Virus record (IMG/VR): IMGVR_UViG_3300048008_000449 | Coordinates: 124,001 to 188,000 of that record | Length of the DNA stretch: 64,000 bases | Direction: 5' to 3' (one strand) | In this document: piece by piece, positions 4,519 through 59,596 of the stretch | Layout: each line of letters begins with the position of its first letter | Numbering within the stretch: the first letter of the stretch is position 1 | Made by a program: the position numbers and the translations under genes | The notes under the pieces: generated by a model | Database searches by the model: none | The model's input: the letters and a program-made list of their open reading frames with translations, nothing else | Told to the model about the DNA's origin: nothing

Positions 4519-4761
4519 CTATATCCAGTTTATAACACCACGGACAGCTAAAGCAAAGTACATTAGTTCCATTAATGCTCTTGGTATGTCTTTGTCTTTG
4601 TATCCCATATATACCCAGATGCTACAACTAAAACAGGCTATACCCCACCCCATCCATTGATACTCTGCTTGTCCACCACTAAGTAAAAAAGCACTTGCCA
4701 TAGCTAAAATAAAACCTAACCAACGAAAACCATCTATGTCTTTGTAGTATCTTATTTTCAT
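4519..4761 (-). CDS. small 3-TM membrane protein (PnuC-like half-transporter type)
   Basis: Start reassigned to MKIRYY because the longer ORF overlaps two tRNAs; three hydrophobic segments, ends GVINW. Confidence 0.6.
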   Translation of the reverse strand: MKIRYYKDIDGFRWLGFILAMASAFLLSGGQAEYQWMGWGIACFSCSIWVYMGYKDKDIPRALMELMYFALAVRGVINWI

Positions 4762-4778
4762 ACTGTTATTTATGTAAG

Positions 4779-4853
4779 TGGTAGTCCCTAGGAGAATCGA
4801 ACTCCTCTTTTCAGGATGAAAACCTGATGTCCTAACCGATAGACGAAGGGACC
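4779..4853 (-). tRNA. tRNA-Glu (UUC)
   Basis: GGTCCCT...AGGGACT-A-CCA cloverleaf; anticodon arm TCAGG-TTTTCAT-CCTGA; GTTCGATTC T-loop. Confidence 0.95.
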
Positions 4854-4855
4854 AT

Positions 4856-4932
<77 letters not shown>

Positions 4933-14332: not shown

Positions 14333-15022
14333 TTATGACAGGTTATAGAATTTCTCTAAACGTTGGGCCCATTTCATTTCCCAATTTTTAAAGTCTTCTG
14401 GACCACTTTCGAACAGTTGCCATTGACAATCACCACTACACATAAAGATAGCAATACGATCAATTGTAGTATTGTACATTTCGTTATGTGCGTTTGCATA
14501 GGCGGCACCTTGTAAGAAATAATCTTCAATCCATTCACGTTTTTTAGGCTTATTAGTCTGCTTAAAGTCCATAATAGTTGGATGTCCTTTATAAACACCA
14601 ACTAAGTCAGTTGTGCCAGCATATAATCCAGCCGCACATAAATTAACTTCAGTTCCCCATATCTCACTAACATCATCTTCAATATTATCCACAACAACCT
14701 GTGCCATTGCCTTAGCTTGTTTGTGTACTATATTATTTCCAGGGTTGTATGTTTCATACTCGCCTAATGCCCAATGTTCTAATATATTGTGCATAACTGT
14801 ACCTCTATTGGCAGCAGTTGTTGTAATGCGTTGTGCTTCTTCTGTACCTACTCTTTTTCTCCATGCCGCCAATCCTGCACGTTTTTCTGCAGGCTGTGTA
14901 GCACTTAAAATAGTGGTAACACTTGGAACAGGATCGCCCCAAGGATTCTCATATAGACGTTTTCCGTCTACACTAGTTCGTTTTAATTCTTTATATGGAT
15001 ATGGACTTTTAATCTTTAACAT
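14333..15022 (-). CDS. PD-(D/E)XK exonuclease
   Basis: PSVTTIL, RGT.MH, YAGTTDLVG, IMDFKQT, YFLQ..AYA. Confidence 0.9.
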   Translation of the reverse strand: MLKIKSPYPYKELKRTSVDGKRLYENPWGDPVPSVTTILSATQPAEKRAGLAAWRKRVGTEEAQRITTTAANRGTVMHNILEHWALGEYETYNPGNNIVHKQAKAMAQVVVDNIEDDVSEIWGTEVNLCAAGLYAGTTDLVGVYKGHPTIMDFKQTNKPKKREWIEDYFLQGAAYANAHNEMYNTTIDRIAIFMCSGDCQWQLFESGPEDFKNWEMKWAQRLEKFYNLS

Positions 15023-31114: not shown

Positions 31115-31981
31115 TTATGCTCTTCGCATACATGTAACTTCTGCAGTACGTTTCCACTTATCAGCACCAAAGCTCTTTTTAAGATCTGCAAGTTTAGTTA
31201 CCATTCTCAAACTAACTTCTCGCATTTTTTCTTTGTTAGAACACATGAAGTCCATTAAGTCATCTTGCTCTTCTGTTGTAAACTGATATTCATTAAGCAT
31301 ACCATCTGCAACAATCTGCTTACAACGTAGAACTTTTTCTCGCATTGTATCCATTGTAAGATCTAAGTAATGACATCTTGACATAATAGCCGCTAAGTGA
31401 TCAGCAATTTTACCACGCACATTATCAAACTTAAGGTTAGTAATAAAGATAACACTACCTTGGAATTCAAAAGTATCTGGAATACCTTCACGTCTTAGTA
31501 ATGCACTATCTGTATTCCAACTTAGTTTACGTTTCTTACATGAATCAAGTGCCGCTTTAAGCAAGTTAAGACTTGTCTCATCATACAATACTGTATCACA
31601 ATCGTCTAACACAAGAACACTATTTTTGTCTGCGTTATTGTAAAGTACTTTGTACAAACCAATTGCACTAGAAGCACCTTTAATAACTTCATAACGTAAT
31701 TTGTTACCTGCAATAGCATCAAACAAATTATTCTTTTCTAGAACTTGTTCAACACCAAAACTTTTACCAACACCTGGAGGGCCTGTTACAACCATACCAC
31801 GTACAACACCATCGATAGATGCTTGTGTCATATCGTCTAAGATGCTAAAACGCTCTCGCATACGTTCTATGATCATCTCATCTGTTTCTTTTGGATTGTC
31901 CTTTGCCTTACTTGGTAGGACCTCAATAATAGTCTCGCCTTTAGTGTTTTTACGAGCTTGTTTTAGTTGCATATTAGCCAT
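31115..31981 (-). CDS. AAA+-type ATPase
   Basis: GPPGVGKS, VLVLDDCD, IFITN, SRC. Confidence 0.85.
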   Translation of the reverse strand: MANMQLKQARKNTKGETIIEVLPSKAKDNPKETDEMIIERMRERFSILDDMTQASIDGVVRGMVVTGPPGVGKSFGVEQVLEKNNLFDAIAGNKLRYEVIKGASSAIGLYKVLYNNADKNSVLVLDDCDTVLYDETSLNLLKAALDSCKKRKLSWNTDSALLRREGIPDTFEFQGSVIFITNLKFDNVRGKIADHLAAIMSRCHYLDLTMDTMREKVLRCKQIVADGMLNEYQFTTEEQDDLMDFMCSNKEKMREVSLRMVTKLADLKKSFGADKWKRTAEVTCMRRA

Positions 31982-32489: not shown

Positions 32490-33194
32490 TTATATTTCAA
32501 GGATTTTAACCCGGTTAACCATAGTTTCTTTAGCATTTGTGTACTTTGATAGCTCATGTTTGTTAACAGTAGCCCTAATTTTAATGTTTCTACCGTTTAT
32601 AATGCTACTAATATCTGGCTGATCTCTCCACCAAAACTTAATTAAGTCTTTTTTAGCATATACAGTAGTAATCATGTAAATATTGCTAGTTTGTATGAAT
32701 TTAACATCCATTACTTCTACTGATAAATCGTAACGTTTACCTCTATCTCCAAAGTACTGGCTACTATGCTTTAGCGAAGATAACTTATCTTCAACTTCTT
32801 CACGTTTTTTGTCAATATTTACACTATGTGGTAAACTAGCTATAATACTAACAGTAAATTTGTTAACATTTGCTTCAGATAGAGATTTAACAACGTTAGC
32901 CTCAAAACTATTAAGGTTGTTAGTCATTTTCTTAATCATAAGTTTACCATTAATAACAGTAATCAAATCATTAGCTTTTGTAATTTGTTCTTCTGTAAAA
33001 TTCATTTTAGGATTTTCAATAATATCAACAATACATGATTTATTATCTTCAATTATGACTGGATTTTCAGGATCTGAGTGATCTGTATATCCTTGTCCAC
33101 TTTTAATAAAACCCTGTGTTTCATGAACTTGTATAGCCGCGGCCATAACATCCACAACTGTAATACTTGGCCAAGGTGTTCTATTCTTAGACAT
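32490..33194 (-). CDS. hypothetical protein with probable C-terminal OB fold
   Basis: IKIRATVNKH...ETMVNRVKI. Confidence 0.7.
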   Translation of the reverse strand: MSKNRTPWPSITVVDVMAAAIQVHETQGFIKSGQGYTDHSDPENPVIIEDNKSCIVDIIENPKMNFTEEQITKANDLITVINGKLMIKKMTNNLNSFEANVVKSLSEANVNKFTVSIIASLPHSVNIDKKREEVEDKLSSLKHSSQYFGDRGKRYDLSVEVMDVKFIQTSNIYMITTVYAKKDLIKFWWRDQPDISSIINGRNIKIRATVNKHELSKYTNAKETMVNRVKILEI

Positions 33195-47744: not shown

Positions 47745-48527
47745 TTAGCCTTTAATTTCAGCTAAAAGCTGATCAAAACTTTCACATAGAATGTTTTCAA
47801 AATTATCACCCCAATGACCGTGAATAATCATATGAATTCTGTTTTCTGTACCAGTATTATGAACAGAATGCAATCTACCTATATCGATTGCTCTAGCATC
47901 ACCTGGTTCCCAAGGTACCATTCCTGCATCTTGCATGCAAAACTTTACTCCTGGTGGATTACTAAGTGCTACGTTAAAGGCTGCTAAGTGTCTTTCTTTA
48001 TAATCTAGATGTGGACTAATAAATCCACCCGGTTCTAGTAACATAAATCTAACTCTTTGATATTTTTTAAAAGGCCAGTGATTTTTAAGCCAATTAACTG
48101 TTACTGGGCACTTGTCTGCGATTTCTGTCCAACCAAATTCTGGTGCTTCGTCTTCTTTCCAAGCACCTTCTTCAACATAGTAATCATTGGGTTGTGTTTT
48201 ATCCCATCCTTGACCATGTACAACTATACTGCTCCAACCGGGATTTATATCGCCTCGGTGTTTTACATACTCACCTAAAAATTGCTCTGCTTCTTTTGCC
48301 ATTTGGTAGTATGGTACATCTAATTGCATTTTTAATGTAGGACAATTAGCTTGTTTCATTATCCATCTAGAGTATGGTATTTTTTGTTTTTTATCTGTTT
48401 TCCAATTTAAGAATTCTTCAGGAGGTAATGCCATATTTTCATAGTGAGAAATATCGCCATTCTCTTCAAAAAACTTTGTTACTTTTGCTAATTGTCTAAT
48501 TCTTATTTCTTCTTTGTCTTGTTCCAT
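47745..48527 (-). CDS. aspartyl/asparaginyl beta-hydroxylase-family 2OG-Fe(II) oxygenase
   Basis: RVRFMLLEPGGFISPHLD...HSVHNTGTENRIHMIIHG. Confidence 0.85.
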   Translation of the reverse strand: MEQDKEEIRIRQLAKVTKFFEENGDISHYENMALPPEEFLNWKTDKKQKIPYSRWIMKQANCPTLKMQLDVPYYQMAKEAEQFLGEYVKHRGDINPGWSSIVVHGQGWDKTQPNDYYVEEGAWKEDEAPEFGWTEIADKCPVTVNWLKNHWPFKKYQRVRFMLLEPGGFISPHLDYKERHLAAFNVALSNPPGVKFCMQDAGMVPWEPGDARAIDIGRLHSVHNTGTENRIHMIIHGHWGDNFENILCESFDQLLAEIKG

Positions 48528-51441: not shown

Positions 51442-52074
51442 TTATTCTATAATTTTTTGCAGAGTTTGAGACTTAAAATTTTCTAATGTAGATGTGTTAG
51501 TTAAGTTAATATCAAAATTCCAACCTGCCCAACTCCATTCGCTTTTATGTACATCAGGAAAAACAACAGACATACTGTTATGTTCAACATTATTTGCACC
51601 TGCTTGATTAATACTAGAAGCAGTAGCCCACCATAATGGTTTCTCATTTCTCCAAACAACTGCTGTTGTTCCACCTAATTTTTTAATTGCTTTAAGTTCA
51701 TTAAAAAATCTACAGTCACTAATAACAACATTTTTTGTACACATCTCAATTTGACGTTCACATGCCGCAACCCAGATATCTGGATGGAAATGTGTTCTCA
51801 AAACATCAGTGCCTACGTGTTGTAATGCAAATCTTGGAGTAAAATTAGGAATATCTAAACGCTCAGCCCACCACTCATCAACAGTTTCTCTCCATACTCT
51901 ACTTTCTGATGTATTTCCTTCTAGTAGGATTCTGTCCCAACCAAATATATTTGCACATGCATCTTTTAATACTCCTGCAAAACTAATACGTTGAAAGCCT
52001 TCTTCGATGAGAAAACCTGCGGCGGTGTCTTTTCCGTGACCAATAAGGCCACATATACCAATTACTTTTTTCAT
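51442..52074 (-). CDS. deoxynucleoside monophosphate kinase (T4 gp1-like)
   Basis: GICGLIGHGKDT, SFA..LK, TPR..LQ.VGT, VISDCRF.NE, H.SE. Confidence 0.92.
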   Translation of the reverse strand: MKKVIGICGLIGHGKDTAAGFLIEEGFQRISFAGVLKDACANIFGWDRILLEGNTSESRVWRETVDEWWAERLDIPNFTPRFALQHVGTDVLRTHFHPDIWVAACERQIEMCTKNVVISDCRFFNELKAIKKLGGTTAVVWRNEKPLWWATASSINQAGANNVEHNSMSVVFPDVHKSEWSWAGWNFDINLTNTSTLENFKSQTLQKIIE

Positions 52075-55710: not shown

Positions 55711-56070
55711 CTAGTTTATAGTGTCAACCGGTTTGAATCCAAAATTAGCAACTACATGTTGAGAACCCGATGAATCTTCAACAATATCTCCAACACTAAC
55801 ACTATACATACGAGATAAACGTTCTATATTTTCTTCAGGACCCATGTTACCTGTGTGAAACACGCCTTCTAATCCATCAGCGGTAATGTTACTAACATGT
55901 GTATAGTAGCCTCGGTTAAAAGCATCAGCGGCAACTGTACCAATTTCATTTTTACTAAAGTTCATGTCTAGCTTTAATGATTGTTTATGAACAGCATCGT
56001 GTCCTTCAGCATTAACTAGATCTATTTCGGCATCTGTTAAATGAATTTGGTATAATTTATATGTTTGCAT
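55711..56070 (-). CDS. early hypothetical protein
   Basis: SVSVGDIVE motif; AAGGAG RBS; early promoter cassette upstream. Confidence 0.75.
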   Translation of the reverse strand: MQTYKLYQIHLTDAEIDLVNAEGHDAVHKQSLKLDMNFSKNEIGTVAADAFNRGYYTHVSNITADGLEGVFHTGNMGPEENIERLSRMYSVSVGDIVEDSSGSQHVVANFGFKPVDTIN

Positions 56071-56082
56071 TTCTGACTCCTT

Positions 56083-56130
56083 TAATTAACTATACATACA
56101 GTATACGATAAGACGTCTTGGTTGTCAACC
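56083..56130 (-). promoter_or_regulatory. early promoter cassette, copy 3
   Basis: GGTTGACA-ACCAAGACGTCTTATCG-TATACT-GTATGTATAGTTAA. Confidence 0.85.
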
Positions 56131-56183
56131 TTTAGTCGTCAGAAAAAACCCAATAAAATCAATGGGTTATAATTTTTTTAAAT

Positions 56184-57389
56184 TTATTTTGATTTATAGT
56201 GAATTAATTTGTCATAATATAGTGCTAAAGTAGCCCATATTGCGTCTGGGTACAAGTTAGTATATTTGTTTCCCATTTTATGATAATTTTCCCATACTGT
56301 TTTACTTACATCAAACTTACTGTAATATTTCCAAAAATCAGTATCTGTTCTATCACTTAACATGTAATGATGTTTTATATATGTACTATTATCATTCCAA
56401 ACATTACGCATTGCTCTATTGTAAGTTTTAGCCCCATATCCACGTTTTAAGCACCGTACAAGCGTTGTTATACTGAATTGCGTCATAAACAGTGCATTAC
56501 TTTCTAAAGGGTCTATAAAGCCGTTACTGAGCCCTACTGCAACTACATTATTGTGCCAGGGATTAGCTAAGACACTAGGATTCCATTTTAACAGTCTAGG
56601 TGTTTTTCCCATAAAGGGAGTTCTGTGTGCATTTACTTTATTAAACTCTGCAAGTGCATCTTCGTCAGTTTGATGTTTGCTACTAAACACATATCCTGTT
56701 CCAATTCTATTTGTTAAATCAATTATAAATTGCCAACCATTACTACGTGCTACGCTTTGAGTGTATCCTTGTACATCATTATCTTGCAATTCAAAAGGAC
56801 AAACCCATGCTCTATCTACTAAATGATTTTCTAATTGTACTTCAGTATTGTCTTTTACAAATTTTCTACGAAACCCTGTGCAGTCTATATATAAATCATA
56901 TCCCTCTGGTAACTCGTCTAATGTGTCTATAATGTGAGTTACATTTTTACAATTATTTTTAACTATGTCTCCGGCTTTTTCAGCATCTAAGTGATATGCA
57001 GTTGCTTGCCAGCCACCTTTGTGATATAGTTGATCATTAATGTTATGCTTATCAACAATACCACTATCGTATTGTTGTTTCCATTTATCAAAAACATTAT
57101 TATCATTAAACCAAAAGGTGAATGCAAACGGATCGCCATTTGGCTTATTCCATTGACTCTTTATGTTTCCAAATTTCTTTTGTGCATTACTTTTTTCCAT
57201 CCATTCGTCTTCTGACATTCCCATGTCTTCAAAGAATTGTGCAATCTGTGGTAATGTACTTTCGCCTACGCCTATAATAGGAATATCACTACTTTCAATA
57301 AGTGTAATATCATAATCTGGAAATTGTTTTTCTAAGTATCCTGCGGCCCACCATCCAGTAGTTCCGCCTCCAATAATACAAATTTTCAT
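56184..57389 (-). CDS. flavin-dependent (tryptophan-halogenase-family) enzyme
   Basis: IIGGGTTGW, IGVGEST, KFG, YHLDA, YIDCTGF, GWQFII, GFIDPLES. Confidence 0.88.
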   Translation of the reverse strand: MKICIIGGGTTGWWAAGYLEKQFPDYDITLIESSDIPIIGVGESTLPQIAQFFEDMGMSEDEWMEKSNAQKKFGNIKSQWNKPNGDPFAFTFWFNDNNVFDKWKQQYDSGIVDKHNINDQLYHKGGWQATAYHLDAEKAGDIVKNNCKNVTHIIDTLDELPEGYDLYIDCTGFRRKFVKDNTEVQLENHLVDRAWVCPFELQDNDVQGYTQSVARSNGWQFIIDLTNRIGTGYVFSSKHQTDEDALAEFNKVNAHRTPFMGKTPRLLKWNPSVLANPWHNNVVAVGLSNGFIDPLESNALFMTQFSITTLVRCLKRGYGAKTYNRAMRNVWNDNSTYIKHHYMLSDRTDTDFWKYYSKFDVSKTVWENYHKMGNKYTNLYPDAIWATLALYYDKLIHYKSK

Positions 57390-57415
57390 AGTTGTTCCTT
57401 ATATGTATTATTTAT

Positions 57416-57446
57416 AATAACGCAGGCGTATTTTACCTGCGTTATT
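57416..57446 (-). terminator. inverted repeat between sbmA and halogenase, abutting a late promoter TATAAATA (57409-57416)
   Basis: AATAACGCAGG-N9-CCTGCGTTATT. Confidence 0.7.
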
Positions 57447-57452
57447 AAATTT

Positions 57453-58424
57453 TTATTTTTCTTCAATTAGTCTTTCAAACTCTCTCAAACGTTTATATAC
57501 GCTTGCTAGTTCAATAATAGTAGGCCATGCTTTAAGTATATATTGCATTGAACCTTCTACTCTACCAAAAGCTCTAATAATTTGTTGCATCACACCTAGT
57601 GTTACAACACCTGCTACAATAGCTGGTGCTAAAAATACATAAGCTGATAATACATTTGCTTGTAAATATGAAATTCTACCTATATTAAAATACAAGTATC
57701 TAATATAAGATTTAAAGTGAATACTTCTTACATCTTGAAATAATTCATCAATTCTTTTAGGACGAATTGTCACATCATCTTCTGCAATTACAAGTATTTT
57801 TCTGTAAGCTGCTTCTTTCTTTTGTAAATCATATTCTACTCCAACTAGACGTAATAACCAACCTAATCCAATTAAGAATATTGTTCCTCCAATACTCCAA
57901 ATTAACGCACCAGTTACTAGTCCATATTGCCAATCACCAAAGAAGAAGATTGGAATACCAACTGATAGTCCTAATAGAATAGGAACAAATTGTACTAGAA
58001 CCATTACTGATTCAATTAAACTTGTACCAAGTCCTTCCATGATACGACTAAACTTAATAGTATCTTCTTGTACACGTTGAGCTGCACCTTCAATAGTACG
58101 TGCTTTGTCGTATACACTATGATACCATTCAACCATTGCTGCTCTCCATCTAAACAAATAGTGTGCAGTAAAGTAACTAACAACTACGGCAATCAAAACA
58201 TAAATTGCAGCCAAGTAAATAAAAGTTCCTAAACTACTCCAATATTCTGTAATTGTAATAGCGTTTGGTGCACCAAGTGCTTTTTGAATCATATCGTAAA
58301 ACTGCCCAAACCATTCATTAATTTTAACGTCAATTTGAACTTGTACCCATAATGAACTTAGGATAATAGCTGAACCCAGCCACGACCACAATGCCCATTG
58401 TTTTTGTGTGAAAAATCTAAACAT
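57453..58424 (-). CDS. sbmA: SbmA/BacA-family peptide transporter
   Basis: INEW...FYD.IQ.AL, HY.FRWR.AM, IEGAAQRVQEDT.KF, Q.KEAAYRK.LV.AED, QI..AFG.V..S.QY....W.TIIEL.SVYKRL..FE; no NBD. Confidence 0.92.
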   Translation of the reverse strand: MFRFFTQKQWALWSWLGSAIILSSLWVQVQIDVKINEWFGQFYDMIQKALGAPNAITITEYWSSLGTFIYLAAIYVLIAVVVSYFTAHYLFRWRAAMVEWYHSVYDKARTIEGAAQRVQEDTIKFSRIMEGLGTSLIESVMVLVQFVPILLGLSVGIPIFFFGDWQYGLVTGALIWSIGGTIFLIGLGWLLRLVGVEYDLQKKEAAYRKILVIAEDDVTIRPKRIDELFQDVRSIHFKSYIRYLYFNIGRISYLQANVLSAYVFLAPAIVAGVVTLGVMQQIIRAFGRVEGSMQYILKAWPTIIELASVYKRLREFERLIEEK

Positions 58425-58468
58425 TTTCTTTTCCTTATATAAAATGCAGAATTAACTACATACATATC

Positions 58469-58507
58469 TATTTATGGCAACTATAGTATGACTAATTTGC
58501 ATAAATA
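58469..58507. promoter_or_regulatory. back-to-back late-type promoters (ATAAATA) driving sbmA and the gp14/gp15 operon
   Basis: CATAAATAG on minus at 58469-58475 and CATAAATAC on plus at 58501-58507; the same motif lies upstream of most structural genes. Confidence 0.7.
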
Positions 58508-58528: not shown

Positions 58529-59596
58529 ATGCCAAGATTAAGTTTATATAAACCATTTAAAGGTAACGACTATAAGTTTATGGATCACGCAATACGTGAA
58601 CAATTCGATATAGGTGGTACTGGAATACACGTACACAAATACCTAGGACCGGATCCTAAGAACGATAGTAAAGATCCTAGCGAGCCTAATTATGGCAGTG
58701 GTATGGAAATAGATAATATTACAGGAGAAGAAATTAATCCTGAAGGTTTAATTGACGAAACAAACATACAAGACTTATTGTTTATGGAAAACAGAGATCG
58801 TAAATACGATCCTGACGTATTTGAACTACGTGGTGTATATAATGTTAGTGATAATGATTTTGATTTAACACAATTTGGTTTATTTTTAACAAATGATACA
58901 TTGTTTATTAGTTTTCATATTAACGATATGGTAGAACGTTTAGGGCGTAGACTTATGCCAGGTGATGTAATTGAATTACCACATTTACGTGATGAACTTT
59001 TACTTACTAACGCTAGAGATGCTATTAATAAATTTTATGTAGTGCAAGATGCCGCTAGAGGAAGTGAAGGATTTTCACAAACTTGGTATCCACACATTTG
59101 GCGTGTTAAAGTAGCACCATTAACAGATACACAAGAATACGCAGATATACTTGGAACTGCTAATGATCCAGATAGTCTTAAAAATGATATAAGTGCATAC
59201 AAAACAGAACTTAACATTAGTAATGCTATTGTAAAGAGTGCTGAAGCTGCTGACCCACTAGGATTACCATTAGCTGACCATTTATTTGGTGTAGAGACTG
59301 AAGATAAAACATATAAGCATGGTGAGACATTAGAACAAGGCGATCAGTTTCCAGTAAGTCCAAACGAAGGTGAGTATTTTGTAAGAACAGACTTTACACC
59401 TAATAGACTTTTTGTCAGAAGAGGCAATAAATGGCATAGATTATATGATAATGTTACTGATCAAACATGGAGTGATAGAACATATAATGCTAGTAGCTTT
59501 ATTAATAACAATGCTACTACAGTTATCGACGATAAAGAGTTTCCTGAAAAGCAAGCACTTAGTCAAGTTATTAAACCAAAGAGTGATTTTGAATAA
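58529..59596 (+). CDS. neck protein (T4 gp14-like) with C-terminal extension
   Basis: DLTQFGLFL.ND.LFI.F, GR.LMPGDVIELPH; precedes the gp15-like gene. Confidence 0.7.
   Translation: MPRLSLYKPFKGNDYKFMDHAIREQFDIGGTGIHVHKYLGPDPKNDSKDPSEPNYGSGMEIDNITGEEINPEGLIDETNIQDLLFMENRDRKYDPDVFELRGVYNVSDNDFDLTQFGLFLTNDTLFISFHINDMVERLGRRLMPGDVIELPHLRDELLLTNARDAINKFYVVQDAARGSEGFSQTWYPHIWRVKVAPLTDTQEYADILGTANDPDSLKNDISAYKTELNISNAIVKSAEAADPLGLPLADHLFGVETEDKTYKHGETLEQGDQFPVSPNEGEYFVRTDFTPNRLFVRRGNKWHRLYDNVTDQTWSDRTYNASSFINNNATTVIDDKEFPEKQALSQVIKPKSDFE

What the first reader, a model, noticed from the sequence alone, without database searches (positions are those of the whole stretch)
56184..58475. Phage-encoded SbmA/BacA peptide importer next to a flavin-dependent halogenase
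Seen: an intact 323-aa SbmA and, 63 nt downstream, a compact 401-aa halogenase-family enzyme, each behind a late-type motif. The halogenase keeps the Lys, has WxWxIP degenerated to WQFIID, and has IDPLES. Established: SbmA/BacA imports antimicrobial peptides (microcins, Pro-rich peptides, NCRs) and affects envelope properties; phage halogenases such as VirX1 exist. I do not know SbmA as a typical phage gene. Inference: the phage may import peptides as nutrient or signal, alter envelope susceptibility, or pair uptake with halogenation/oxidation chemistry.
Basis: partly seen in the sequence, partly recalled or inferred. Interest (0 to 1): 0.7.

Follow-up and report, generated by a model that had tools for sequence, protein, structure and literature searches.

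The report
Marine jumbo-phage SbmA importer gene
An uncultured marine jumbo phage carries its own, strongly conserved and transcribed copy of a short SbmA-type membrane importer that is a core gene of SAR11-like ocean bacteria, while the halogenase beside it is an unrelated, swappable neighbour.

Summary
The 323-aa protein matches the whole Pfam SbmA_BacA model. It keeps all five 'glutamate ladder' residues of E. coli SbmA but lacks the N-terminal TM0 domain, as do its cellular relatives. The window is part of a 205-kb fragment of an uncultured marine jumbo myovirus; its nearest isolates are PA5oct, Atu_ph07 and Phosso.

SbmA is not a one-off capture:
- Hundreds of viral contigs carry it, and 56 of 63 contigs sampled through the neighbouring structural gene have it.
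- dN/dS is about 0.08.
- A single viral clade is not rejected.
- Metatranscriptome contigs cover exactly this gene and neither flank.
- The nearest cellular copies are 82-93% identical, and 81 of 81 sampled Pelagibacterales genomes carry one short copy.
- No credible sbmA was found among 50,697 deposited phage records.

The link to the halogenase is facultative. About half of SbmA loci have it, most compact-halogenase loci lack SbmA, and a strong hairpin plus a separate late-type promoter lie between the two genes. The halogenase is a compact (about 400 aa) flavin-dependent enzyme. It keeps the catalytic Lys and Glu but lacks the tryptophan-binding C-terminal region.

Best reading: a host-derived auxiliary importer, substrate unknown, sitting in a variable cassette slot. 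An ExbB/MotA-like gene trio recurs beside SbmA in far more diverged phages and is a better candidate partner.

The parts
57453..58424 (-). Gene for a short (323 aa) SbmA/BacA-family transporter. It has the core transmembrane domain TM1-6 only, with no TM0 domain and no nucleotide-binding domain.
   Evidence: PF05992 scores 461.5 bits over the full profile. It aligns to E. coli SbmA residues 78-393 at E 2.5e-88. Residues equivalent to Y116, R190, E193, E203, E276, R280, K281, E287, D288, Y368, E378 and R385 are invariant in 162 viral and cellular sequences; the Y285 position is Ile. dN/dS is 0.07-0.10. The homodimer model scores 0.55 against a best control of 0.00.
58469..58475 (-). Late-type promoter motif ATAAATA (context CCATAAATAGA), 51 nt upstream of the SbmA start codon.
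   Evidence: The motif is enriched 12.8-fold upstream of genes and also precedes structural genes. It is conserved upstream of SbmA in relatives. Metatranscriptome contigs end at 58434-58450, downstream of it.
58437..58467 (-). Small hairpin in the 5' leader, between the promoter motif and the Shine-Dalgarno sequence (AAGGAA, 58431-58436).
   Evidence: Fold of -7.1 kcal/mol with z -1.4, so weak on its own. Relatives keep a hairpin at this place with altered stem sequences.
57415..57447 (-). 13-bp hairpin just after the SbmA stop codon; terminator-like, with an A/U-rich rather than pure-U tail.
   Evidence: -18.1 kcal/mol, z -6.4, 0 of 200 shuffles fold as well. Metatranscriptome contigs stop at 57461 and do not continue into the halogenase.
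57409..57416 (-). TATAAATA late-type motif in front of the halogenase, followed by the Shine-Dalgarno sequence AAGGAA (57395-57400).
56184..57389 (-). Gene for a compact (401 aa) flavin-dependent halogenase-family enzyme.
   Evidence: PF04820 scores 245.8 bits over profile positions 1-411 of 458. The AlphaFold2 model has pLDDT 92.6. Foldseek matches RebH, PrnA, Thal and VirX1 with TM 0.76-0.87 by the model but only 0.58-0.71 by the target. GGGxxGW and K72 are invariant, E296 is nearly invariant, and GWQF replaces the WxW part of WxWxIP.
56141..56168 (-). Intrinsic-terminator-like hairpin (AACCCA...TGGGTT) with a T-run, after the halogenase.
   Evidence: Read from the sequence. The fold is weak: -6.5 kcal/mol, z -0.6.
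56100..56128 (-). Sigma-70-type promoter (TTGACA, 17 nt, TATACT) in front of orf119. It marks the end of the SbmA/halogenase slot.
   Evidence: 11 of 12 consensus matches. TTGACAA is enriched 9-fold upstream of genes in this window.
58529..59596 (+). Divergently transcribed virion structural gene (orf355) with its own ATAAATAC motif (58501-58507, +). It is the constant left border of the slot.
   Evidence: phrog_11591 virion structural protein, E 8.6e-93. It lies next to SbmA in 56 of 63 contigs sampled through it.

Best explanation
The 323-aa gene is a host-derived auxiliary gene of an uncultured marine jumbo myovirus. It encodes a minimal, homodimeric, proton-coupled SbmA-type (SLiPT) importer made of the six core helices only. 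It is essentially the same protein that SAR11, SAR116 and other oligotrophic marine bacteria carry as a conserved chromosomal gene.

The phage transcribes it as its own unit from a late-type ATAAATA promoter. The likely purpose is to keep or raise, in the infected cell's inner membrane, the import activity that the host's own copy provides. By analogy the substrate is a peptide-like or other hydrophilic solute; its identity is unknown.

The halogenase is a separate cassette that shares a hypervariable slot between the orf355/gp15 structural module and the neck genes. It is a compact flavin-dependent halogenase-family enzyme with the catalytic Lys and Glu but without the tryptophan-binding C-terminal module, so its substrate is not free tryptophan bound in the canonical way.

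Shown here: gene identity, residue conservation, phage context, spread, purifying selection, RNA-library presence and facultative linkage. Inferred: transport activity, direction, substrate and benefit to the phage.
For: Identity and key residues:
- Searches give the family match and the conserved functional residues.

Phage context:
- gp15-like tail sheath stabiliser, virion protein, neck protein and tail sheath genes flank the locus.
- The nearest isolates are jumbo phages at 35-40% identity.

Spread in viruses:
- 195 close viral hits and 456 with a family profile.
- 56 of 63 contigs sampled through orf355 carry SbmA.

Selection and origin:
- dN/dS is 0.07-0.10 with dS near saturation. The dN of SbmA plateaus at about 0.1, while gp15 reaches 0.27 and orf430 0.45.
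- One viral clade is not rejected (p-AU 0.70), and the constrained tree has the higher likelihood.

Cellular counterpart:
- The best 80 of 561 confirmed cellular hits, the closest kept by the tool, are 82-86% identical to the window copy.
- The gene sits in conserved synteny in SAR11.
- 81 of 81 Pelagibacterales genomes have one short copy.
- Only 5 positions are typical of the viral copies.

Expression and assembly:
- Contigs 99-100% identical from three metatranscriptome runs cover 57461-58450 only.
- The homodimer model scores 0.55 against a best control of 0.00. That mark was reached by 21 of 30 proteins solved as pairs and 0 of 23 solved as single chains. The pass may come from memory of the solved SbmA dimer.

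Neighbours elsewhere are typical auxiliary genes:
- RpiB, Rpe, phosphomannomutase, SAM synthetase, a purine permease and an Orn/Arg decarboxylase.

Independence of the halogenase:
- linkage counts; hairpin and separate promoter.
Against: - No transport assay exists for any TM0-less member, so function is inferred from 43-45% identity to E. coli SbmA.
- The cytoplasmic-gate Tyr285, whose Ala mutant is non-functional in E. coli (PMC8442886), is Ile/Val/Leu in the whole marine family.
- A late-type promoter is not the usual timing for a nutrient-uptake auxiliary gene. Some relatives instead have a sigma-70-type promoter.
- The metatranscriptome evidence comes from assembled contigs, which show presence but not absence.
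- The host is not identified. The closest cellular clade is a set of GC-0.36 alphaproteobacterial single-cell genomes.
- Halogenase adjacency recurs in several SbmA subclades, so some functional tie cannot be excluded.
Confidence: 0.6

Rival explanations
1. SbmA and the halogenase form a functional pair. The importer brings in a peptide or aromatic compound, and the compact halogenase, with its open active site, halogenates it inside the infected cell.
For: - The two genes are on the same strand, 63 nt apart, each behind a late-type motif.
- The adjacency occurs directly, or with one small gene between, in several SbmA subclades whose halogenases are only 58-67% identical.
- A related phage lineage has a long-form halogenase 6.5 kb from SbmA.
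- Loss of the Trp-binding C-terminal region would suit a bulkier substrate.
Against: - 24 of 48 or 28 of 96 SbmA loci have the halogenase, and 0 of 19 in the diverged viral SbmA family do.
- About half of the 66 halogenase loci lack SbmA nearby, and 23 of the 66 sit beside an AMP-binding enzyme instead.
- A strong hairpin and a separate promoter lie between the genes.
- RNA contigs cover SbmA only.
- 78 deposited phage records match this halogenase, so halogenases are common in marine phages, while none holds a credible SbmA.
- No flavin reductase was found in the 205 kb held.
Confidence: 0.12
2. SbmA works with the phage's ExbB/MotA-like protein, a single-pass protein with a membrane-embedded Asp, and a third small membrane protein. 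Together they form a proton-motive-force-driven envelope uptake or translocation module. The halogenase is irrelevant to it.
For: - The four genes are packed head to tail, with overlapping stops and starts, in L327.
- The trio lies directly upstream of SbmA in lineages whose SbmA is 53%, 69% and 86-90% identical to the window's, and 3.6 kb upstream at 50%.
- The window's own genome keeps the trio at G000:C1 about 25.6-27.2 kb.
- D14 in the transmembrane helix of the second protein is invariant.
Against: - Only 7 of 110 close-family loci and 6 of 29 diverged-family loci have the trio nearby.
- In the window's genome the two lie 155 kb apart.
- The second protein's periplasmic part is a beta-sandwich (DUF2135/TerD-like, Z 7.4, borderline), not an ExbD, TolR or MotB fold.
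- No TonB-dependent receptor was found in the phage fragment or in the four alphaproteobacterial genomes tested.
- E. coli SbmA needs no such partner (PMC8442886).
Confidence: 0.2
3. The phage copy changes envelope behaviour rather than nutrition. For example, it could clear membrane-active peptides from the periplasm, as BacA does in rhizobia, or alter susceptibility to competitors or superinfecting phages late in infection.
For: - BacA protects rhizobia from nodule peptides by importing them (established knowledge; summarised in PMC12003926 and PMC13316013).
- Late-type promoter timing.
Against: - There is no evidence that antimicrobial peptides matter for planktonic oligotrophs.
- The viral protein is nearly indistinguishable from the host's own, so it adds dose, not a new property.
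- Elsewhere the gene's neighbours are metabolic genes.
Confidence: 0.08
4. The gene is not truly viral (mis-binned cellular DNA), or it is a decaying passenger.
For: - Other 'phage' sbmA records look cellular. The region of the 'Acinetobacter phage MD-2021a' record holds yaaJ, a patatin gene, tdcB and pepO.
- Long-form hits occur in prophage calls from isolate genomes.
Against: - In dozens of independent contigs up to 472 kb the gene is flanked on both sides by phage structural genes.
- The frame is intact, dN/dS is about 0.08, and the functional residues are invariant.
Confidence: 0.02

Closest known systems
E. coli SbmA / Sinorhizobium BacA (SLiPT secondary transporters; PDB 7P34)
   Same: Same Pfam family. 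The two are 43-45% identical over the six core helices. All five glutamate-ladder residues and R190, R280, K281, D288, Y116 and Y368 are kept. There is no ATPase domain. The predicted homodimer uses the TM1-2 and TM5-6 regions.
   Different: It lacks the TM0a/TM0b domain that the structural papers present as the hallmark of the fold. The cytoplasmic-gate Tyr285 is aliphatic. It is encoded by a virus. No substrate is known.
Short SbmA-like protein of SAR11, SAR116 and other marine oligotrophs
   Same: Same length and architecture, and 78-93% identical. The functional residues are identical, and only five positions are typical of the viral copies.
   Different: The cellular copies sit in conserved chromosomal synteny (NhaA, NDUFS4-like, SbmA, glpX, recJ in SAR11). 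The phage copy sits in a variable slot between structural genes behind a phage late-type promoter.
Transporter-type auxiliary metabolic genes of marine phages (for example pstS in cyanophages and pelagimyophages)
   Same: A host-derived uptake component kept under purifying selection in marine myoviruses and located in variable gene islands.
   Different: pstS encodes a periplasmic binding protein. This gene encodes a complete inner-membrane secondary transporter, from a family I found in no deposited phage genome and in no paper on phage auxiliary genes that I could search.
VirX1 and other phage 'tryptophan halogenases' (PDB 6QGM; RebH and PrnA as the family archetypes)
   Same: Flavin-dependent halogenase fold, a GxGxxG motif, and the catalytic Lys and Glu. 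It is carried by a marine myovirus.
   Different: It is about 130 residues shorter (401 aa against 510-550). The difference is an internal deletion of about 50 residues and the loss of about 64 C-terminal residues that build the Trp pocket. The WxWxIP motif is replaced by W-Q-F-x-I-x. It belongs to a large subfamily of about 400-aa proteins (1407 hits) and is only 24-27% identical to the solved enzymes.

Membership tests
SbmA/BacA family (Pfam PF05992; SLiPT transporters) | Full-length match to the SbmA_BacA profile above the curated cut-off | tested here: met
   461.5 bits against a cut-off of 24, over profile positions 1-314 of 315.
SbmA/BacA family (Pfam PF05992; SLiPT transporters) | Glutamate ladder (E193, E203, E276, E287, E378 of E. 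coli SbmA) for proton relay | tested here: met
   The equivalents are E120, E130, E204, E215 and E305. They are invariant in 82 viral and 80 cellular sequences.
SbmA/BacA family (Pfam PF05992; SLiPT transporters) | No nucleotide-binding domain (this separates SLiPTs from the BclA, YddA and Rv1819c ABC transporters) | tested here: met
   The protein is 323 aa in an open frame of 332 aa, with no ABC_tran match. The next gene is the halogenase.
SbmA/BacA family (Pfam PF05992; SLiPT transporters) | N-terminal TM0 domain (TM0a and TM0b; eight helices per protomer) | tested here: not met
   The alignment starts at E. coli residue 78, and there is no room upstream. The cellular marine relatives are the same, with frames of 323-346 aa. 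Other short forms exist down to 30% identity.
SbmA/BacA family (Pfam PF05992; SLiPT transporters) | Gate residues Y116, R280, K281, Y285, D288 and Y368 | tested here: inconclusive
   Five of the six are kept. Y285 is Ile in all viral copies and Ile, Val or Leu in the cellular copies.
SbmA/BacA family (Pfam PF05992; SLiPT transporters) | Homodimer | tested here: inconclusive
   The model supports binding but does not show it. The score is 0.55 against a best control of 0.00; that mark was reached by 21 of 30 solved pairs and 0 of 23 single chains. The pass may reflect memory of the solved SbmA dimer.
SbmA/BacA family (Pfam PF05992; SLiPT transporters) | Proton-driven import of peptides or bleomycin | not testable with these tools
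   This needs complementation or proteoliposome assays.
Flavin-dependent tryptophan halogenases (Pfam PF04820) | FAD-binding GxGxxG, catalytic Lys (PrnA/RebH K79) and catalytic Glu (PrnA E346, RebH E357) | tested here: met
   GGGTTG at 7-12, K72 and E296. K72 is invariant and E296 nearly invariant in 29 subfamily members.
Flavin-dependent tryptophan halogenases (Pfam PF04820) | WxWxIP motif | tested here: not met
   The sequence is W219-Q-F-I-I-D224. GWQF is the subfamily consensus.
Flavin-dependent tryptophan halogenases (Pfam PF04820) | C-terminal helical module that forms the tryptophan pocket | tested here: not met
   The profile is covered only to position 411 of 458. After the last aligned block there are 42 residues against about 106 in RebH. 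The TM-score by target is 0.58-0.71.
Flavin-dependent tryptophan halogenases (Pfam PF04820) | Overall halogenase fold | tested here: met
   The model has pLDDT 92.6. Its TM-score by the model is 0.80-0.87 to RebH, PrnA, Thal and PyrH, and 0.76 to VirX1.
Phage auxiliary (host-derived) gene | Embedded among phage hallmark genes, has close cellular homologues, is under purifying selection, and is expressed | tested here: met
   Context. Cellular homologues. Selection. RNA-library contigs restricted to the gene; these are assembled contigs, so this is supportive, not conclusive.
SbmA-halogenase operon or functional pair | Conserved adjacency in both directions, and co-transcription | tested here: not met
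   The halogenase is present at 24 of 48 SbmA loci and at 0 of 19 in the diverged family. SbmA is within three genes at 34 of 66 halogenase loci. A hairpin and a separate promoter lie between the genes. RNA contigs stop before the hairpin.

The most novel reading that the evidence does not exclude
The TM0-less SbmA is the fixed core of a flexible phage 'uptake and tailoring' island. In different marine myoviruses it is combined with a proton-motive-force motor-like trio (an ExbB/MotA-like protein, a protein with a membrane-embedded Asp, and a third membrane protein). It is also combined with tailoring or metabolic cassettes: a halogenase, Asp/Asn-hydroxylase-like cupins, RpiB and Rpe. On this reading, infected cells actively import and modify a specific, still unknown seawater compound. 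Phage carriage of the gene would also help explain why the protein is 78-93% identical across SAR11, SAR116, Gammaproteobacteria and viruses.
Probability: 0.12. Interest if true: 0.8.

Novelty: new member of a known kind. Interest (0 to 1): 0.58.

Why it matters
The physiological substrate of SbmA-type transporters is still unknown even in E. coli. Here a minimal, TM0-less version was found in every sampled SAR11 genome and is extremely conserved. It has also been kept for a long time by abundant marine jumbo and T4-like phages and appears in ocean metatranscriptomes.

That makes it a tractable target: a 323-aa protein that can be tested by complementation in E. coli. It would also be, as far as my searches show, the first complete secondary transporter of this class seen as a phage auxiliary gene. 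If it imports peptides or another organic nutrient, it adds a route by which viruses reprogramme uptake in the ocean's dominant heterotrophs.

The compact halogenase subfamily, with more than a thousand members, is a separate resource of enzymes with probably non-tryptophan substrates.

Tried and rejected
- Near-identical DNA search of deposited phages: no match.
- tblastn of SbmA against 50,697 phage records: four hits. One record is a bacterial-looking region and a second is the same phage name with an identical hit. The other two are unannotated fragments of 7.5 kb and 2.7 kb that I read as host DNA.
- Idea that this is an HTVC008M-type pelagimyophage: rejected. The tail sheath and gp15 proteins are closest to PA5oct, Phosso and Atu_ph07 jumbo phages. 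The pelagimyophage paper and its supplements list a tryptophan halogenase but no SbmA.
- Literature searches pairing sbmA with phage auxiliary genes, SAR11, viromes or jumbo phages: nothing relevant.
- Idea that a separate small gene supplies TM0: rejected. In SAR11 the upstream 93-aa ORF is an NDUFS4-like protein. In the phage the upstream region is a 104-nt divergent promoter region.
- Flavin reductase, HtrA-like protease and TonB-dependent receptor genes in the phage's 205 kb: none found. The record is only about 56% complete.
- Taxonomic names for the closest cellular genomes: not provided by the tools.
- HMM identification of the second and third proteins of the ExbB-like trio: no family match. 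Fold search gave only a borderline beta-sandwich match.
- Exact TATAAATA as the promoter: not enriched, 5 found against 13.9 expected. The shorter ATAAATA is the enriched motif.
- Compact halogenase in 81 Pelagibacterales genomes: not found with this query.
Full report
**1. What is there**

The window is bases 124,001-188,000 of a 204,772-bp linear virus record that CheckV rates 56% complete. Its GC content is about 33%.

The two ORFs are exactly as described: 57453-58424(-), 323 aa, and 56184-57389(-), 401 aa, 63 nt apart. The first matches Pfam SbmA_BacA end to end (461.5 bits). The second matches Trp_halogenase (245.8 bits), but only over profile positions 1-411 of 458.

The neighbours are phage structural genes: a virion protein (orf355), a gp15-type tail sheath stabiliser, a gp13/14-type neck protein and the tail sheath. 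The tail sheath and gp15 proteins are closest, at 35-40% identity, to jumbo phages of 287-490 kb: PA5oct, Phosso, Atu_ph07, XbC2 and SCTP-2. Relatives of this locus lie on contigs up to 472 kb. This is therefore an uncultured marine jumbo myovirus, not an HTVC008M-type pelagimyophage.

**2. The SbmA protein**

Against solved structures it aligns to E. coli SbmA residues 78-393 of 406 (E 2.5e-88). In the cryo-EM papers, SbmA has a peripheral TM0 domain (helices 0a and 0b) plus six core helices. Transport depends on a 'glutamate ladder' (E193, E203, E276, E287, E378) and on R190, R280, K281, Y285 and Y116 (PMC8442886; PMC13316013).

The phage protein is the core only. The open frame allows at most 332 aa, and a 104-nt divergent promoter region lies upstream. 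All five glutamates, plus R190, R280, K281, D288, Y116, Y368 and R385, are present. They are invariant in 82 viral and 80 cellular sequences. Only Y285 differs, being Ile, Val or Leu.

A homodimer model passes the tool's test, with a score of 0.55 against a best control of 0.00. That mark was reached by 21 of 30 proteins solved as pairs and 0 of 23 solved as single chains. The interface lies in residues 46-123 and 204-279, the regions equivalent to TM1-2 and TM5-6. The pass may reflect memory of the solved SbmA dimer.

TM0-less forms are not peculiar to this clade. Representatives of 315-345 aa that align from residue 1 exist down to 30% identity.

**3. Cellular counterparts**

The best 80 are 82-86% identical to the window copy. 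They come from complete Pelagibacter chromosomes, SAR116/Puniceispirillales, a few Gammaproteobacteria, and a set of GC-0.36 'uncultured Alphaproteobacteria' single-cell genomes. None of them has phage neighbours.

In SAR11 the gene sits in conserved synteny: NhaA, a Zn-ribbon protein, an NDUFS4-like protein, SbmA, glpX and recJ. All 81 of 81 evenly sampled Pelagibacterales genomes have one copy, in frames of 323-353 aa.

Identity stays at or above 78% across all these groups. The viral copies are closest to the GC-0.36 alphaproteobacterial clade, at a mean of 88% and a maximum of 93%. Only five positions are typical of the viral copies.

**4. Is it a stable phage gene?**

- IMG/VR holds 195 close viral relatives and 456 when searched with a family profile.
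- Sampling the locus through the neighbouring orf355, independently of SbmA, gives 56 of 63 contigs with SbmA. The seven without it form one sublineage with other genes, or nothing, in the slot.
- dN/dS against diverse viral copies is 0.07-0.10, with dS near 1. The dN of SbmA plateaus at about 0.1, while gp15 reaches 0.27 and orf430 0.45.
- In a quick maximum-likelihood tree, 75 of 82 viral sequences form one clade next to the GC-0.36 cellular clade. Forcing all 82 together gives a better likelihood and is not rejected (p-AU 0.70). This fits one old capture followed by spread among phages. The root is not established.
- The gene has moved within the lineage. L014, L076 and L081 share many genes with this genome but hold SbmA in other neighbourhoods. 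It also sits in a related PA5oct-like lineage next to SAM synthetase, an RNase H-like gene, phosphomannomutase and an HtrA-like protease.
- A second, diverged viral family (49-53% identical) lies in T4-like contexts: gp32; UvsW and an Mre11-like gene; RpiB and Rpe; a purine permease and an Orn/Arg decarboxylase.
- Among 50,697 deposited phage records there is no credible sbmA. The annotated one, in 'Acinetobacter phage MD-2021a', lies among yaaJ, a patatin gene, tdcB and pepO, and looks bacterial.
- I found no paper describing a phage SbmA. The library searched is incomplete.

**5. Expression signals**

ATAAATA is enriched 12.8-fold in upstream regions, with 22 of 79 against 1.7 expected. It precedes structural genes such as the tail sheath gene, the neck gene and orf355. 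TTGACA-17-TATAAT-type promoters precede other genes.

SbmA has CCATAAATAGA 51 nt before its start codon. The motif is conserved in relatives, whereas relatives with the ExbB-like trio upstream have a sigma-70-type promoter instead.

After the SbmA stop codon lies a 13-bp hairpin (-18.1 kcal/mol, z -6.4). It overlaps the TATAAATA in front of the halogenase. After the halogenase comes a terminator-like hairpin with a T-run, then a TTGACA-17-TATACT promoter for orf119.

In three marine metatranscriptome runs from two samples, contigs 99-100% identical to the window cover 57461-58450 only. That span is the SbmA gene; neither the halogenase nor orf355 is covered. One contig ends at 58450 followed by adapter-like letters. 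Carried-over DNA would cover the flanks equally, so this favours a real, separate SbmA transcript. Contigs cannot prove that flank transcripts are absent.

**6. The halogenase**

The GGGxxGW motif and K72 (RebH K79) are invariant and E296 (RebH E357) is nearly invariant across 29 relatives. WxWxIP is replaced by GWQF-x-I-x.

Compared with RebH it lacks about 50 residues between the two conserved blocks and about 64 at the C-terminus. That is the region which, in PrnA and RebH, builds the tryptophan pocket (established knowledge of those structures).

The AlphaFold2 model (pLDDT 92.6) matches the tryptophan halogenases with TM 0.80-0.87 by the model and 0.64-0.71 by the target; for VirX1 the figures are 0.76 and 0.58-0.59.

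It belongs to a large subfamily of about 400-aa proteins, with 1407 hits at E of 1e-10 or better. This subfamily evolves much faster than SbmA, at 53-73% identity. 'Tryptophan halogenase' is therefore an unsupported name. 'Compact flavin-dependent halogenase-family enzyme, substrate unknown' is what the data allow. No flavin reductase was found in the 205 kb held.

**7. Are the two genes linked?**

- Going from SbmA: the compact halogenase follows in 24 of 48 loci sampled through orf355. It follows in 28 of 96 close-family loci and 0 of 19 diverged-family loci.
- Going from the halogenase: of 66 halogenase-bearing loci, 34 have SbmA within three genes and 23 have an AMP-binding enzyme within three genes. 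L167 and L168, which carry the closest halogenases outside the window's own near-identical group (69-70% identity), have no SbmA.
- The space between orf355 and orf119/orf430 is a variable slot. SbmA is nearly constant there. The other occupants vary: the halogenase, RpiB plus halogenase, a small ORF plus halogenase, Asp/Asn-hydroxylase-like genes, unknown genes, or nothing.
- These counts are of contigs, many of them near-duplicates, not of independent lineages.

Taken with the hairpin, the separate promoter and the RNA pattern, the adjacency is best explained by a shared insertion slot. A looser functional tie is not excluded.

**8. A better candidate partner**

In several lineages three small membrane-protein genes lie directly upstream of SbmA and are tightly packed:
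- an ExbB/MotA/TolQ-like protein (PF01618);
- a single-pass protein with an invariant Asp in its helix and a beta-sandwich periplasmic part;
- a third protein of 150-190 aa.

This arrangement recurs where SbmA is 86-90%, 69% and 53% identical to the window's. Where SbmA is 50% identical, the trio lies 3.6 kb away. The window's own genome has the trio 155 kb from SbmA. It is still a minority arrangement: 7 of 110 close-family loci and 6 of 29 diverged-family loci. It is a lead only.

**9. Verdict**

The notable result is the transporter: a virus-borne, TM0-less SLiPT-type importer shared with SAR11 and other oligotrophs, conserved and apparently transcribed. The halogenase pairing is not supported. 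I file it as a new member of the known class of host-derived phage auxiliary genes, with its function inferred rather than shown.

Noticed in passing
L237:3624-5183 (-), which is G000:C1 about 25.6-27.2 kb and outside the window; also L327:3061-4608, L082:8359-9924 and L076:6345-7986: A conserved phage gene trio: an ExbB/MotA-like protein, a single-pass protein with an invariant transmembrane Asp and a DUF2135/TerD-like beta-sandwich, and a third small membrane protein. In several diverged phage lineages it lies directly upstream of SbmA.
   Followed up: partly
L325-L356 (for example L334:4968-5939, L325:4977-5969, L337:4856-5833): A second viral family of short SbmA, 49-53% identical to the window's. 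It sits in T4-like contexts: gp32; UvsW and an Mre11-like gene; RpiB and Rpe; a xanthine/uracil permease and an Orn/Arg decarboxylase.
   Followed up: partly
L073:13098-16141; L172:5983-8402; L167:6001-8391: An AMP-binding (adenylating) enzyme gene lies next to the halogenase in 23 of 66 halogenase loci, with both the long-form and the compact halogenases. It is a more recurrent neighbour outside the SbmA slot.
   Followed up: partly
L167:2400-4728; L172:2294-5999; window 47745-48527 (-): Several paralogous Asp/Asn beta-hydroxylase-like cupin genes cluster beside compact halogenases. The window has one such gene next to the tail sheath gene.
   Followed up: no
L318 (CAKLQH020000002.1, 147309-158268): The record named 'Acinetobacter phage MD-2021a' holds sbmA among yaaJ, a patatin gene, tdcB and pepO. 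This region looks like bacterial chromosome rather than phage.
   Followed up: partly
window 58437-58467 (-): A small hairpin lies in the SbmA leader between the late-type motif and the ribosome-binding site. Relatives keep a hairpin at this place with different stem letters. It is statistically weak on its own (z -1.4).
   Followed up: partly
L093:6993-7939: In this complete Pelagibacter genome, the glpX gene next to SbmA reads as two ORFs (151 and 152 aa) that cover the two halves of the Pfam model.
   Followed up: no
L305-L311 and L317 (for example L307:2632-4973): One sublineage of the same jumbo phages lacks SbmA. The slot holds two unknown 390-aa genes on the other strand, or is empty (L317).
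   Followed up: partly
window 4519-4917, 14333-15022, 31115-31981, 32490-33194, 51442-52074 and 55711-56070 (all -): Near-consensus TTGACA-17-TATA(A/C)T promoters precede a subset of genes, and ATAAATA precedes the structural genes. This gives a clean early/late promoter split in the window.
   Followed up: partly
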